This document shows positions 9,135 through 45,285 of a stretch of DNA of 64,000 nucleotides, piece by piece. The notes below the pieces were generated by a model that was given only the letters and a program-made list of their open reading frames with translations, was not told where the DNA came from and ran no database searches. The translations under genes and the position numbers were made by a program. This stretch comes from Orbicella franksi (lineage: Eukaryota): NCBI GenBank assembly GCA_964199315.1, contig OZ116705.1:5456001-5520000 (forward strand), given 5' to 3'. Every line of letters begins with the position of its first letter. Position 1 is the stretch's first letter.

Positions 9135-9405
9135 ATGGAATTGGAAGACAAAATCAAGAAGCTCGAAGAACAATTCAAAGGTTTGCCTAAAGTCCTCATC
9201 AAGAGAACTCTCTGTGGTGATGACGTCAATGAGGACATTAGCAAAGCTACGGATCGGTTACAGGAATTTCAACAGATGAAAAGTAGCTTGTTTTTCAATC
9301 CAATGGCGGCTACTCCTGTTACAGAGGAATTAAAAGGGAGTTTGTGTGTCACCCCTGCGGAGGAATTCGACAGAAGCTCAGTGGCAAAGAATTGCATTGT
9401 AGAAG
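9135..9405 (+). CDS. Gene A exon: CUE-like domain 1
   Basis: MELEDKIKKLEEQFKGLPKVLIKRTLCGDDVNEDISKATDRLQEF; acceptors at 9098 or 9117; donor GAAG|GTAAAG. Confidence 0.75.
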
Positions 9406-42604: not shown

Positions 42605-45285
42605 GTTATTGTGATTGTTATTGTGATTAAAGATTATTTTCAATCCGTACTGCACACTCTCGAGAGTTTGTTTACGTTTTTTGTGTTGGTTCATGTAAGA
42701 CATCATAAAATGTAACATTTTGCGTCTAATTACGTGAAGTAAATTTAAAGTTTCATGTCAACCGCCATTATGGATGTGAAGCTTTATGTTTTGCTCTGTC
42801 TCGTATCACTTGATGAATGAACTTCGCAGCCATAAAAATCAATGAAACGGTTGGAAAAAGAATTTGAAAGGCTTCAAAGATAAGGTATGTGGTTTGCAAC
42901 AAATAATGTTGATTTGCATTCCATCAAGTGAGACATAATGCTTACAAACATTAGGGTGCTGAGACTGCGCAGTACGGACTGGAAATCATTTTTTAATATT
43001 TGTACTGGTAATAGTCATTGGTAATGCACACCGTCTTGGTAATCTGTGCCTACATTAATCGTTTGGGTTGGGGAGCGGGGGGAGGTCAGCGGACTCCCAC
43101 ATGAAAAAGGACGAGGGTTCTCGTTGGAAATTTTGGAAAGATCTCTAAGAAGTCCCAAGATCCTGCTTTGAATGCTTTGTGGGTGTGGCTTGAAATTGTT
43201 TTCAACCCTAAGAGGTACCAATTCTAAAACAACACATTATACCCTGTAATATTTTTTTTTGCGTAATGCCTAACATGCACTGCAAAAGCTCCTGCTGTGG
43301 ACCTTTTGAGGCTGAAGACCCTAAGAGATATGAAATCCACTTTTTTAATCCCTTAAAGGTATGACAAGCACCCCCATATATGGGAGTTCCCCCCAGGGTT
43401 TGGGCTGATAGAAAAATATATTTTGGCAGAGACGGGATAGCCTTCCGTTCCCCCTGCCTCTAAACCCTTAATCTCACACTGAGTGATATGCATGCAGGTA
43501 TCAAATAATGTCATGACTACAAGACAGCATCCTACAAGCTAAAATATTTATATGTATGTGATAAATTTGTACTGATGACCATGTTCTAATTAATTTAGGT
43601 TTAGATATCTCAAGAGGTAGTCCTTTCATAACCATGGAAATAATGACATGAAATGTGAGGCACTTTGAATAGAAAAGAGTATTTTTTAATTTTGTTTCCC
43701 ATTATTTGTTTTGTTGCCACCCTGAATTAATGGGTTGACTGCATGTATTCATGGGGTTTCCTTATAAAAATTGTATGGGCATTTTTCTGGGACAAAAAAG
43801 TGGCCGTAACAACGAGGTGACTGTGTTAAAGAGGTGGCCATAAAGGGAATTTCTACTTTATTGTCAAAAATGATTTTCGAAATTAAATATTATATACACA
43901 CTATTTCAGCCTACTTAGTTAATGTTAGCTGGGTACTACGAGGAAGATACACAAGATAAAGATGATATTAATATTTAATATCATAATTTACCATTTTTTA
44001 CGCTGAACCAGGATTTATTTTTCCTGAGAATTGGACACCAATGCCACACCCTAACACAACTGTGCACACAGTACAGCTCTCCTCAGACTCCTCAGAGTAT
44101 CAAGATGTCATGGACAAGTTGCAAGCCACTGCAAGTGCACTAAATGTCCAGAAAATTGAACGAATACAAAATCCTCATCTGTATCAGACTTACATGTTGA
44201 AAAAATTGAAAATGAGCCAAGACAATGGAGGAGTTGAGGGTGAACGACAACTCTTCCATGGAACCAGAGGAGAAAATATCAGCCGTATCAATGCACAAGG
44301 TTTTAACCGGAGCTTCTGTAGACTCCATGGTGAGTTGCAGGGAATTAGTATTTAGCACGACCAATAGCAAGAATGTCCATTTAAATTCTGATAATAATGT
44401 GTAGAGGTATATTTCAGCGTATATTCCCCTTTGTGTGAGACAGGCCTTCAAAATAACAGTTATTTGTACTTGCCTCTCCCAAAACATATTAAGCTTGTTA
44501 CGTTTGACCAATTTACTTTACATTATACTGCTGACTATTTTAAGTTACATATGACTAATTTTATTGTGTTTTGTTTTACCCTATATCCTTTTATCTTGTT
44601 ATATATTTCACTGAAAGACCCAGAGGACATGAAATAAATTAACTTATGTATGATCCAAAAGACATGGTGGCATTGATACAAACCTTAAAATGGTGGCCAG
44701 TCCAGTTTTCTTAAAACTGGGTGCAGGCCCAGTGGCCTCATGGTTTGTGTGCTCTACTCTGGATCCGGTGCTCCAGATTTGGCTGGAGACATTGTGTTGA
44801 CGTTCCTGGGTATAATGCCACTTTACTGATGAGCCACTGGCTCGTATGTAGACGTAACCTTTCTTAGAAATTACATGGGGGTAAAAAAGTGAGTTTCACA
44901 GACGAGGTTATGGTATCAAATTGCTGTTGGAGCCAGCTCTTTAGCTTTTAAAGCAGTACAGATGTTTTTCTAAAGTTTGTAAGTTATTGTCTGGATTACT
45001 TTTGCAGGTGGAATTCTTGGACGTGGTGTGTATTTTGCAAAAGATGCTTCTTATTCAGTTCGATTTGCAGGGGTTCCAGGTGGAAATCGCTACATGTACC
45101 TCGCGCGGGTCCTGGTTGGTCAGTATTGCGATGGAGACTTTGATTTGATTGTACCTCCACCAAAAGATCCTTCCAGGCCAGAAGTGCTGTACGACTCTGT
45201 TGTAGATCAGTGTGAAAGTCCTAATATCTTTGTTGTTTTCTTTGATAATCAGTGCTACCCAGAATACCTTATAACCTTTCAGTGA
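42340..45285 (+). CDS. PARP gene D: WWE + mono-ADP-ribosyltransferase, ~286 aa
   Basis: Exons 42340-42604, 44012-44329, 45008-45285; phase 1-1; sum 861 nt in frame; in-frame TAA at 42298 upstream of the ATG; first donor (GTTATT) is weak. Confidence 0.8.
43090..43394. mobile_element. MITE, GGGACTCCCATAT-type family
   Basis: GGACTCCCACATGAAAAAGGACG / ATATGGGAGTTCCCCCC. Confidence 0.7.
44012..44329 (+). CDS. Gene D exon: PARP catalytic domain, N-terminal half
   Basis: FPENWTPMP...IERIQNPHLY...LFHGT...GFNRSF; donor CATG|GTGAGT. Confidence 0.95.
44725..44860 (+). mobile_element. Internally deleted tRNA-headed SINE fragment
   Basis: A-box-like GTGGCCTCATGG head; tail GCCACTGGCTCGTATGTAGAC matches the SINE tail at 54630-54667. 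Confidence 0.55.
45008..45285 (+). CDS. Gene D last exon: PARP catalytic domain, C-terminal half
   Basis: GGILGRGVYFAKDASYS...PNIFVVFFDNQCYPEYLITFQ*. Confidence 0.95.

What the first reader, a model, noticed from the sequence alone, without database searches (positions are those of the whole stretch)
9135..45285. Four-gene mono-ART array built by phase-1 exon shuffling around a constant two-exon catalytic cassette
Seen: four co-oriented PARP genes share identical catalytic exon boundaries (acceptor before LPxxWxPMP, phase-1 intron after HG). They carry four different N-terminal architectures: A CUE-CUE-Pro, B Pro only, C full PARP14-like, D WWE only. 14 of 16 coding introns are phase 1 (A 4/4, B 3/3, C 5/7, D 2/2), so exons are interchangeable modules. 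A and B reuse pieces of C's N-terminus (CUE-like, PPKPKPK), while D reuses C's C-terminus. Established: the H-Y-I triad marks mono-ARTs, and PARP14/12/10/7 are antiviral interferon-stimulated genes in vertebrates. Inference: a lineage-specific, modular ADP-ribosylation immune locus in which a PARP14-like ancestor was partitioned into specialised derivatives.
Basis: partly seen in the sequence, partly recalled or inferred. Interest (0 to 1): 0.8.

Follow-up and report, generated by a model that had tools for sequence, protein, structure and literature searches.

The report
Coral PARP14 gene and truncated copies
A stony-coral (Orbicella) chromosome carries a full-length PARP14-type ADP-ribosyltransferase gene next to three shortened relatives; this arose by ordinary tandem and partial gene duplication that reused an ancient gene layout, much as vertebrates made PARP9 and PARP15 from PARP14.

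Summary
Four intact, co-oriented PARP genes lie at 9.1-45.3 kb. Each has an H-Y-I catalytic domain split at the same two phase-1 introns.

- Gene A (612 aa; order CUE-like, PxKP, Pro-rich, CUE-like, PARP) is confirmed exon by exon in RNA contigs from four runs.
- Gene C is 98-100% identical to NCBI's Orbicella faveolata "PARP14-like" protein.
- Genes B (408 aa) and D (286 aa) are open and have conserved splice sites, but I could not lay RNA on them.

I count 13 of 15 phase-1 introns, not 14 of 16.

- The catalytic cassette and the phase-1 bias are inherited. A sea-anemone gene has the same 1,1,0,0,1,1 phase pattern, a Stylophora paralogue shares the last four phases, and Lingula PARP14 keeps both catalytic introns.
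- Three module borders lie inside exons, so classical exon shuffling does not explain them.
- The array is not Orbicella-specific. Each gene type has graded relatives in other coral assemblies, one of them named (Desmophyllum).
- An immune role rests on analogy only.

The best reading is an old tandem array of PARP14 partial duplicates. The CUE/UBA-like module fused to these enzymes is the less expected part. Another first-stage note of this scan (s1-207811) covers that module on this same stretch.

The parts
9135..9405 (+). Gene A exon 1: ATG plus first CUE/UBA-like module (transcript contigs start about 9097); ends in phase 1
   Evidence: RNA contigs of 4 runs join 9405 to 10929; translation; three-helix model and UBA/CUE fold matches
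10929..11021 (+). Gene A exon 2: 93 nt, phase 1-1, holds the PPKPKPK motif
   Evidence: GT-AG borders. A 95-nt gap in contigs of X25 and X26 (and 45 unmatched letters in X1) fits this exon. One contig of run X14 runs unspliced through intron 2
11148..12017 (+). Gene A exon 3: 870 nt, phase 1-1; Pro-rich repeats, then the second CUE/UBA-like module (11726-11881)
   Evidence: RNA contigs; 80% DNA identity of 11715-11813 to 9123-9222
12476..12811 (+). Gene A catalytic exon 1 (phase 1-1; holds His of the H-Y-I triad)
   Evidence: RNA joints 12017>12476 and 12811>14332; Pfam PARP
14332..14600 (+). Gene A catalytic exon 2 with stop codon (holds Tyr and Ile of the triad)
18736..18850 (+). Gene B exon 1: ATG plus PxKP motif, homologous to A exon 2; donor G|GTAAGA, phase 1
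   Evidence: tblastn with A exon 2, E 1e-4; sequence read. No RNA check
20762..21271 (+). Gene B exon 2: Pro-rich (PPLPPK repeats), phase 1-1; its acceptor is homologous to that of A exon 3
   Evidence: No RNA check
22134..22466 (+). Gene B catalytic exon 1
   Evidence: 79% DNA identity to A, ending near the exon borders; Pfam PARP
23369..23637 (+). Gene B catalytic exon 2 with stop codon
28161..29313 (+). Gene C exon 1: CUE/UBA-like module (28161-28316), R/G-rich region with PPKPKPK, then about 60 residues that P0178 and Actinia P0033 align and that may be a first RRM (no Pfam hit). The true start is unresolved: the open frame runs from 27996 without an ATG
   Evidence: Mapped with P0178. Pfam found no family in this exon at E 0.01
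29977..30210 (+). Gene C exon 2: PARP14-type RRM, phase 1-1
   Evidence: Pfam RRM_PARP14_3, E 2.5e-11; junctions
31146..32896 (+). Gene C exon 3: KH-like region, phase 1-0
34502..34675 (+). Gene C exon 4: start of macro 1, phase 0-0
35032..37060 (+). Gene C exon 5: rest of macro 1, macro 2, macro 3, WWE; phase 0-1
   Evidence: Pfam Macro with 3 stretches and a weak WWE hit
37653..37967 (+). Gene C catalytic exon 1
38334..38611 (+). Gene C catalytic exon 2 with stop codon
42340..42604 (+). Gene D exon 1: ATG plus WWE domain. Homology to C starts at 42378, which matches the middle of C exon 5 (36843)
   Evidence: ATG and donor are conserved in L001
44012..44329 (+). Gene D catalytic exon 1
45008..45285 (+). 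Gene D catalytic exon 2 with stop codon

Best explanation
This is an old tandem array of PARP14-family mono-ADP-ribosyltransferase genes in a stony coral (Orbicella).

Gene C is the full-length form: a CUE/UBA-like module, an R/G-rich region, RRMs, a KH-like region, three macrodomains, WWE, and an H-Y-I catalytic domain.

Genes A, B and D are shortened relatives that keep the last two exons (the catalytic domain).
- A and B pair those exons with C's N-terminal type of sequence: CUE-like module, PxKPKPK motif and low-complexity linker.
- D pairs them with C's WWE domain.

They most likely arose by tandem duplication followed by partial duplication or internal deletion. A copy that loses C's exons 2-5 stays in frame because the introns on both sides are phase 1. 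That phase pattern, and the split of the catalytic domain after His-Gly, were inherited from the PARP14 ancestor of cnidarians and bilaterians.

Shown here: the gene structures (A by RNA), intact ORFs, family membership of the catalytic domains, conservation of the intron positions in other phyla, and distinct relatives of each gene type in other corals.

Inferred: the order of events, and the function. I propose four MARylating enzymes that share one catalytic module but are aimed differently. A and C would be aimed by a ubiquitin-binding-like fold, B by proline-rich ligand motifs, D and C by ADP-ribose-binding WWE, and C also by RNA-binding and macro domains. The setting is probably stress or antiviral signalling.
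For: Structure and identity of the genes.
- Same exon borders and phases in all four genes.
- RNA contigs confirm every A junction.
- C matches NCBI's O. faveolata PARP14-like protein P0178.
- The best solved-structure matches are PARP15 and PARP14, well ahead of PARP12 and then PARP10, for the group and for A, C and D tested alone.

Age of the duplications.
- A+B are sisters (95/97 and 100/100 support). All four lie in one cnidarian subgroup. One clade is not rejected.
- Paralogue DNA similarity stops at exon borders. dS is 0.4-0.75 for A-B and about 1.5 for C-D, so the duplications are old.

Inherited intron pattern.
- Actinia has phases 1,1,0,0,1,1; Stylophora P0102 has 0,0,1,1; Lingula keeps both catalytic introns.

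Truncated copies look functional.
- D's homology to C begins inside C exon 5.
- Purifying selection on relatives: dN/dS is 0.15 for A, 0.09-0.36 for B and 0.49-0.59 for D.
- Each type has relatives in other corals. A B-like gene next to a CUE-like exon occurs in L009.

Precedent.
- Vertebrate PARP9 and PARP15 are partial duplicates of PARP14 (PMC10221186).
Against: - The catalytic-domain trees are poorly resolved. C's Stylophora and Montipora relatives are about as close to C as D is, so a local origin of A/B and D from C is not proven.
- A/B-type first catalytic exons form a broad, well-supported clade of their own with a 4-residue insert. That could mean an independent old family.
- A has an intron between its CUE-like module and the PPKPKPK motif, where C has none.
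- No functional or induction data exist.
- The B-like copy in L009 has frame disruptions, or read errors, in catalytic exon 1.
- Co-location of gene types in other corals rests on equal contig lengths, not on sequence I could fetch.
Confidence: 0.75

Rival explanations
1. One reading: the four architectures were assembled by classical exon shuffling. Recombination within phase-1 introns moved interchangeable 1-1 exons around a fixed catalytic cassette at this locus.
For: - 13 of 15 coding introns are phase 1, and A exons 2-4 and B exons 2-3 are symmetric 1-1.
- The junction between the N-terminal part and the catalytic part is the same phase-1 acceptor in all four genes.
- The PxKP exon occurs as a separate exon in both A and B.
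Against: - The cassette and the phases predate the locus.
- D's 5' border, A's second CUE-like module and C's CUE-like module are not bounded by introns.
- Only two intron positions are new to A and B.
- No module here was shown to come from an unrelated gene.
Confidence: 0.15
2. A/B-type genes (low-complexity N-terminus plus PARP14-type catalytic domain) are an old separate family. They merely sit beside a PARP14-like gene. The shared CUE-like module moved between the families later, possibly from the A type into C.
For: - The A/B-type clade is distinct: 97/94 support for 8 sequences, inside a 17-sequence clade with 90/93 support, and it carries a shared 4-residue insert.
- A named A/B-type fragment exists in Desmophyllum pertusum.
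- Some PARP14-like genes lack the CUE-like module: Actinia P0033, Stylophora P0102 and P0175.
Against: - A/B are still nearer to C and D than to any sequence outside the cnidarian subgroup.
- The catalytic introns are identical.
- CUE-like modules head full-length PARP14-like proteins in Montipora (five copies) and Actinia (two copies).
- Linkage seems conserved in other corals.
Confidence: 0.25
3. B and D are decaying partial copies, that is pseudogenes or untranslated leftovers of segmental duplication.
For: - No RNA evidence was obtained for them here.
- D has a raised dN/dS of 0.49-0.59.
- The B-like copy in L009 has a disturbed frame.
Against: - Both have complete open frames with canonical GT-AG sites.
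- All triad residues are kept.
- The duplications are old (dS 0.4-1.5), yet the frames are intact.
- Each type has several relatives in other corals at 73-91% identity.
- D's start codon and donor are conserved in L001.
Confidence: 0.1

Closest known systems
Vertebrate macro-PARP cluster PARP9 / PARP14 / PARP15 (human 3q)
   Same: A full-length PARP14 sits beside shorter paralogues made by partial duplication of PARP14 (PMC10221186; the cluster is described in PMC1266365). The catalytic domain is of the same clade and has one conserved internal intron.
   Different: The coral derivatives drop the macrodomains and keep either the N-terminal CUE-like and Pro-rich part or the WWE domain. PARP9 and PARP15 keep two macrodomains. 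The coral duplications are independent of the vertebrate ones. All four coral copies keep an H-Y-I triad, whereas by my own knowledge, not tested here, PARP9 has lost it.
Cnidarian PARP14 (Stylophora pistillata PARP14, P0102; Actinia tenebrosa P0033)
   Same: Gene C shares the RRM, macro x3, WWE and PARP order and the same intron positions and phases. The macrodomain 1 of a S. pistillata PARP14 is an active hydrolase in vitro (PMC10221186); I did not check whether that is P0102.
   Different: C carries an N-terminal CUE/UBA-like module and an R/G-rich region that P0102 and P0033 lack. Its catalytic domain is only 47-53% identical to theirs, so they are paralogues rather than orthologues.
PARP10 (ubiquitin-interaction motifs plus mono-ART)
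   Same: Like gene A, it joins a ubiquitin-binding element to an H-Y-I mono-ADP-ribosyltransferase (PARP10's architecture is from my own knowledge).
   Different: A's catalytic exons score far better against PARP14/15 than against PARP10 (69 vs 40 bits). The ubiquitin-related element in A is a three-helix CUE/UBA-like fold, not a UIM, and ubiquitin binding is untested.
PARP11 (WWE plus catalytic domain)
   Same: Gene D has the same minimal WWE-PARP layout and a similar size (PARP11's layout is from my own knowledge).
   Different: D's catalytic exon matches PARP15/14 (74 and 66 bits) better than PARP12, the only solved member of the PARP11/12 group that appeared (53 bits). Its WWE is a copy of C's (58% identity). 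The resemblance is therefore convergent.

Membership tests
PARP14/PARP15-type (macro-PARP, 'subgroup 3') catalytic domain | PARP catalytic fold with His-Tyr-(Leu/Ile) in place of His-Tyr-Glu | tested here: met
   Pfam PF00644 hits on all eight catalytic exons; 7 of 8 reach the gathering score, and B exon 2 scores 25.5 vs 26.7. LFHGT, GVYFA and (S/N)IFV are present in A-D. Ile aligns with the Leu of PARP15.
PARP14/PARP15-type (macro-PARP, 'subgroup 3') catalytic domain | Closer in sequence to PARP14/15 than to other PARP subfamilies | tested here: met
   Solved-structure searches: PARP15/14 at 95-108 bits, PARP12 at 68-91, PARP10 at 51-74, tankyrase about 33 for the profiles. The order is the same for A, C and D tested alone; B was tested only within the profiles.
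PARP14/PARP15-type (macro-PARP, 'subgroup 3') catalytic domain | Single conserved intron inside the catalytic domain (Otto et al. 2005) | tested here: met
   A phase-1 intron after (H/N)-G is present in A-D, Stylophora, Actinia and Lingula. The paper's statement was read. The human position itself was not checked here.
Full-length PARP14 architecture | RRM and KH region, three tandem macrodomains, WWE, catalytic domain | tested here: met
   Met for gene C only: Macro x3, RRM_PARP14_3, weak WWE, PARP. Not met for A, B and D, which have no macrodomain or RRM.
CUE domain (Pfam PF02845) | Match to the family profile | tested here: not met
   The three window modules give no CUE hit even at E 5. 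Their Montipora homologues (P0181, five copies) do hit CUE at E 1e-14 and align to the window modules at blastp E 1e-5 to 1e-8. The canonical Phe-Pro is replaced by Leu-Pro three residues later in the window copies.
CUE/UBA three-helix ubiquitin-binding fold | Compact three-helix bundle resembling solved UBA/CUE domains | tested here: inconclusive
   The AlphaFold model has pLDDT 85 and three helices. The top PDB matches are EDD, Mud1 and Cbl-b UBA domains and gp78, Tollip and CUEDC1 CUE domains, with TM 0.6-0.75. No match reaches E 0.001, as expected for 55 residues. Ubiquitin binding is not testable here.
Exon shuffling (modules bounded by introns of one phase) | Each transferred module is delimited on both sides by same-phase introns | tested here: not met
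   This holds for the catalytic cassette and the PxKP exon. It fails for D's WWE 5' border, A's second CUE-like module and C's CUE-like module, which lie inside exons.
Antiviral / interferon-type induced PARPs | Induction by viral mimics or cGAMP; antiviral activity | not testable with these tools
   Only analogy is available. Nematostella PARP12-like genes are reported as cGAMP-induced (PMC11784840). The two Nematostella immune papers I searched do not mention PARPs in their main text. ISRE-like boxes are not enriched in the window.

The most novel reading that the evidence does not exclude
Hexacorals (stony corals and sea anemones) have fused a ubiquitin-binding CUE/UBA-type module, in one to five copies, to PARP14-family mono-ADP-ribosyltransferases. 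Gene A, which has two such modules and a catalytic domain and nothing else recognisable, would then be a dedicated ubiquitin-directed ADP-ribosyltransferase. It would be a single-chain invertebrate counterpart of the vertebrate PARP9-DTX3L or PARP10-UIM link between ubiquitin and ADP-ribosylation.
Probability: 0.2. Interest if true: 0.65.

Novelty: new variant of a known kind. Interest (0 to 1): 0.4.

Why it matters
- It gives a second, independent case of PARP14 spawning shortened neighbours, alongside vertebrate PARP9 and PARP15. This suggests that the family's ancient phase-compatible introns make such truncations easy to survive.
- It shows that the intron after His-Gly, and a phase-1 intron just upstream of the catalytic domain, go back to the common ancestor of cnidarians and bilaterians.
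- It points to an undescribed pairing of a CUE/UBA-like fold with a mono-ART in corals and anemones. I found no paper holding both 'CUE domain' and 'PARP14'. The pairing is directly testable with recombinant protein.
- For coral biology it adds an annotated, partly RNA-verified set of four candidate stress or immune enzymes. No evidence for an immune role was obtained here.

Tried and rejected
- The search for homologous proteins with B's Pro-rich ORF returned nothing. Low-complexity words swamped the candidates.
- The profile search with the first catalytic exons returned only unspliced genomic ORF fragments, so it gave no splice evidence for B or D.
- Five of the 12 encoding-contig look-ups found no record: Stylophora P0175 and P0219, and Montipora P0181, P0182 and P0183. 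Direct synteny in those named species could not be read.
- The old O. faveolata contig (L005) proved to be a haplotig-duplicated assembly, and its neighbouring gene calls were of no use.
- ISRE-like motifs show no enrichment. The NF-kB-like excess is explained by a repeat family.
- Rfam and tRNA scans of the window found nothing.
- My first dN/dS figure for the C-D WWE segment was computed out of frame and is discarded.
- AU tests could neither show nor reject a single origin of A-D.
- Rejected idea: that the four catalytic domains belong to separate ancient PARP subfamilies. All are PARP14/15-type.
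Full report
**What is in the sequence**

The window is eukaryotic and comes from a stony coral. Gene C is 98-100% identical, in most of its exons, to NCBI's 'poly [ADP-ribose] polymerase 14-like [Orbicella faveolata]' (P0178). The older O. faveolata contig MZGG01000418.1 aligns at 96-99.5% DNA identity.

ORF listing, Pfam scans and tblastn find exactly four PARP catalytic domains. 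All are on the + strand and each is split into two exons.

In all four genes the first catalytic exon begins at an AG that leaves two bases of a split codon, two to three codons before the (L/F)PxxW motif. It ends at CAY G|GTGAG after His-Gly. The second exon begins at an AG that completes that Gly codon. Both introns are phase 1.

Paralogue DNA similarity stops within about 10 bases of these borders, and the introns do not align.

**Gene models**

- RNA contigs from four runs (at least three studies) join 9405>10929, 12017>12476 and 12811>14332.
- Contigs of X25 and X26 leave a 95-nt gap, and a contig of X1 has 45 unmatched leading letters. Both fit exon 2 (10929-11021) and its joint to 11148.
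- One contig of run X14 runs unspliced through intron 2.
- The result is a 612-aa open frame with four GT-AG introns, all phase 1.
- The domain order is CUE-like module, PPKPKPK exon, Pro-rich repeats, second CUE-like module, catalytic domain.

Gene C was mapped with P0178.
- It has seven coding exons with phases 1,1,0,0,1,1.
- Pfam finds a PARP14-type RRM, three macro stretches, a weak WWE hit and PARP.
- Its start is unresolved.

Gene B has a first exon (18736-18850) that is homologous to A's exon 2. It also has a Pro-rich exon whose acceptor matches that of A's exon 3. This gives 408 aa with three phase-1 introns.

Gene D starts at an ATG just upstream of its WWE domain. Its 286-aa frame has two phase-1 introns. 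The ATG and the CAG|GTTATT donor are conserved in another coral contig, L001.

**Family**

The catalytic exons match PARP15 and PARP14 best, then PARP12, then PARP10. This holds for the profiles of all four and for A, C and D tested alone. All four keep His, Tyr and Ile at the triad positions.

In trees with vertebrate, amphioxus, Lingula, anemone and coral sequences:
- A and B are sisters.
- All four lie in one cnidarian subgroup, outside a mostly bilaterian PARP14/15 clade.
- Deeper order is unresolved.
- Holding A-D together, with or without C's Stylophora and Montipora relatives, is not rejected (p-AU 0.25 and 0.36).

**The cassette is inherited**

I mapped annotated proteins back onto their own genomic loci.
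- The Stylophora paralogue P0102 has phases 0,0,1,1 for its last four introns, at places homologous to C's.
- Actinia tenebrosa P0033 has 1,1,0,0,1,1, the same as C.
- Lingula PARP14 has a phase-1 intron a few codons before its LP motif and a phase-1 intron at the same spot after Asn-Gly. It also has one extra phase-0 intron, and its RRM exons are all 1-1. Nine of its 13 resolved introns are phase 1.
- Dozens of ORF fragments from other coral assemblies break off exactly at His-Gly.
- Otto et al. 2005 reported a single conserved intron in the catalytic domains of human PARP9, 10, 14 and 15 (PMC1266365).

Of about eight independent intron positions in the array, six are phase 1. Only two (A intron 1, and A intron 2 = B intron 1) are new to this locus. 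The phase bias is real, but it is a trait of the gene family.

**How the short genes were made**

D's similarity to C starts at C 36843, in the middle of C's exon 5. There is no trace of macrodomains upstream of D.

A's second CUE-like module lies inside exon 3 and is 80% identical in DNA to the first. C's module is not set off by an intron.

These borders do not fit recombination within introns.

The junction of every N-terminal part to the catalytic exons does use the same phase-1 acceptor. Loss of C's exons 2-5 would also keep the frame. I therefore read the array as tandem duplication plus partial duplication or internal deletion, made tolerable by inherited phase-compatible introns.

Synonymous divergence is 0.4-0.75 for A-B and about 1.5 for C-D, so the events are old.

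Relatives show purifying selection for A (dN/dS 0.15) and B (0.09-0.36). The constraint on D is weaker (0.49-0.59).

**Distribution**

C's first catalytic exon is 72% identical to its Stylophora relative and 75% to its Montipora relative. I used this as a yardstick.

Fragments in ENA, JGI and Logan assemblies form graded series for each type.

| Type | Identity range of relatives |
|---|---|
| A | 99 to 72% |
| B | 84 to 73% |
| C | 93 to 70% |
| D | 99 to 78% |

- The A/B type forms its own supported clade with a four-residue insert.
- That clade includes a named protein of Desmophyllum pertusum.
- Pairs of different types share a contig length, hence probably a contig, in other assemblies.
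- In contig L009 a B-like gene is followed 3.3 kb downstream by a CUE-like exon, as in the window.

The array is thus not peculiar to Orbicella. How far it reaches beyond stony corals is open.

**The CUE-like module**

Pfam does not recognise the three window copies. They do align with five tandem modules at the head of a Montipora PARP14-like protein, and those hit Pfam CUE at E 1e-14. They also align with two modules in an Actinia protein.

A model built from that alignment is a confident three-helix bundle. Its best PDB neighbours are UBA and CUE domains, some solved in complex with ubiquitin. The E-values are not significant for so small a domain.

A PPKPKPK-like motif follows the modules in A, B, C and the Montipora protein.

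I found no paper holding both 'CUE domain' and 'PARP14'. Another first-stage note (s1-207811) flags the same module on this stretch.

**Function**

Nothing here tests it. The immune reading rests on vertebrate PARP14 and on reports that cnidarian PARP12-like genes respond to cGAMP (PMC11784840).
- ISRE-like boxes are at chance level.
- An excess of kB-like boxes is carried by a repeat family.
- A pore-forming MACPF gene lies 2.6 kb downstream on the other strand.

**Verdict**

The evolutionary story should be restated. This is an old, conserved tandem array of partial PARP14 duplicates that inherited its splice architecture. It is not a lineage-specific product of phase-1 exon shuffling. It parallels the vertebrate PARP9/14/15 cluster (PMC10221186). 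The CUE/UBA-like fusion is the most promising lead.

Noticed in passing
window 9413-9650, 20524-20698, 24886-24970, 25109-25259, 33178-33332, 40513-40572, 43093-43392: A short repeat family lies in the introns and spacers of the array and carries a palindromic NF-kB-like box (GGGGAACTCC / GGGAGTTCCC). It accounts for the window's excess of that motif (18 vs 5.4 expected). RNA contig depth over the copy at 9388-9581 is 1,000-11,000, against 20-50 on gene A exons, so copies elsewhere are highly represented in RNA.
   Followed up: partly
window 47929-50643 (- strand): ORFs with a MACPF signature (…YFGTHY…) and Cys-rich PAN/apple-like segments point to a pore-forming-type gene 2.6 kb downstream of gene D. 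Another first-stage reader also noted it (s1-207944).
   Followed up: no
window 2900-6040 (+ strand): An RTE/LINE-type retrotransposon with endonuclease and reverse-transcriptase ORFs. The Rfam gathering-threshold scan of the whole window gave no hit, so the twister ribozyme noted by another reader at 2834-2906 does not reach Rfam's cut-off.
   Followed up: partly
L005 (O. faveolata MZGG01000418.1): The 2017 assembly holds window 27.6-34.4 kb twice and 38.9-44.4 kb twice (96-99.5% identity). These are probably uncollapsed haplotypes. NCBI's gene calls around PARP14-like there are therefore unreliable.
   Followed up: partly
window 11281-11602 and 20850-21230: The Pro-rich exons of A and B are built of internal repeats (about 66-nt units in A; PPLPPKQAQLT-like units in B). 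A long His-rich alternative frame overlaps them. This is a composition effect, not a second gene.
   Followed up: no
window 19264-19770: A 253-bp tandem duplication at 94% identity lies inside B's first intron.
   Followed up: no
window 11022-11147: One RNA contig (run X14) runs unspliced through intron 2 of gene A. If translated, it would stop after the PPKPKPK exon and give a roughly 140-aa protein with only a CUE-like module. It may simply be pre-mRNA.
   Followed up: no
window 141-814: Two ORFs consist of SDIQSN-type hexapeptide repeats, that is a minisatellite-like tandem repeat at the window's start.
   Followed up: no
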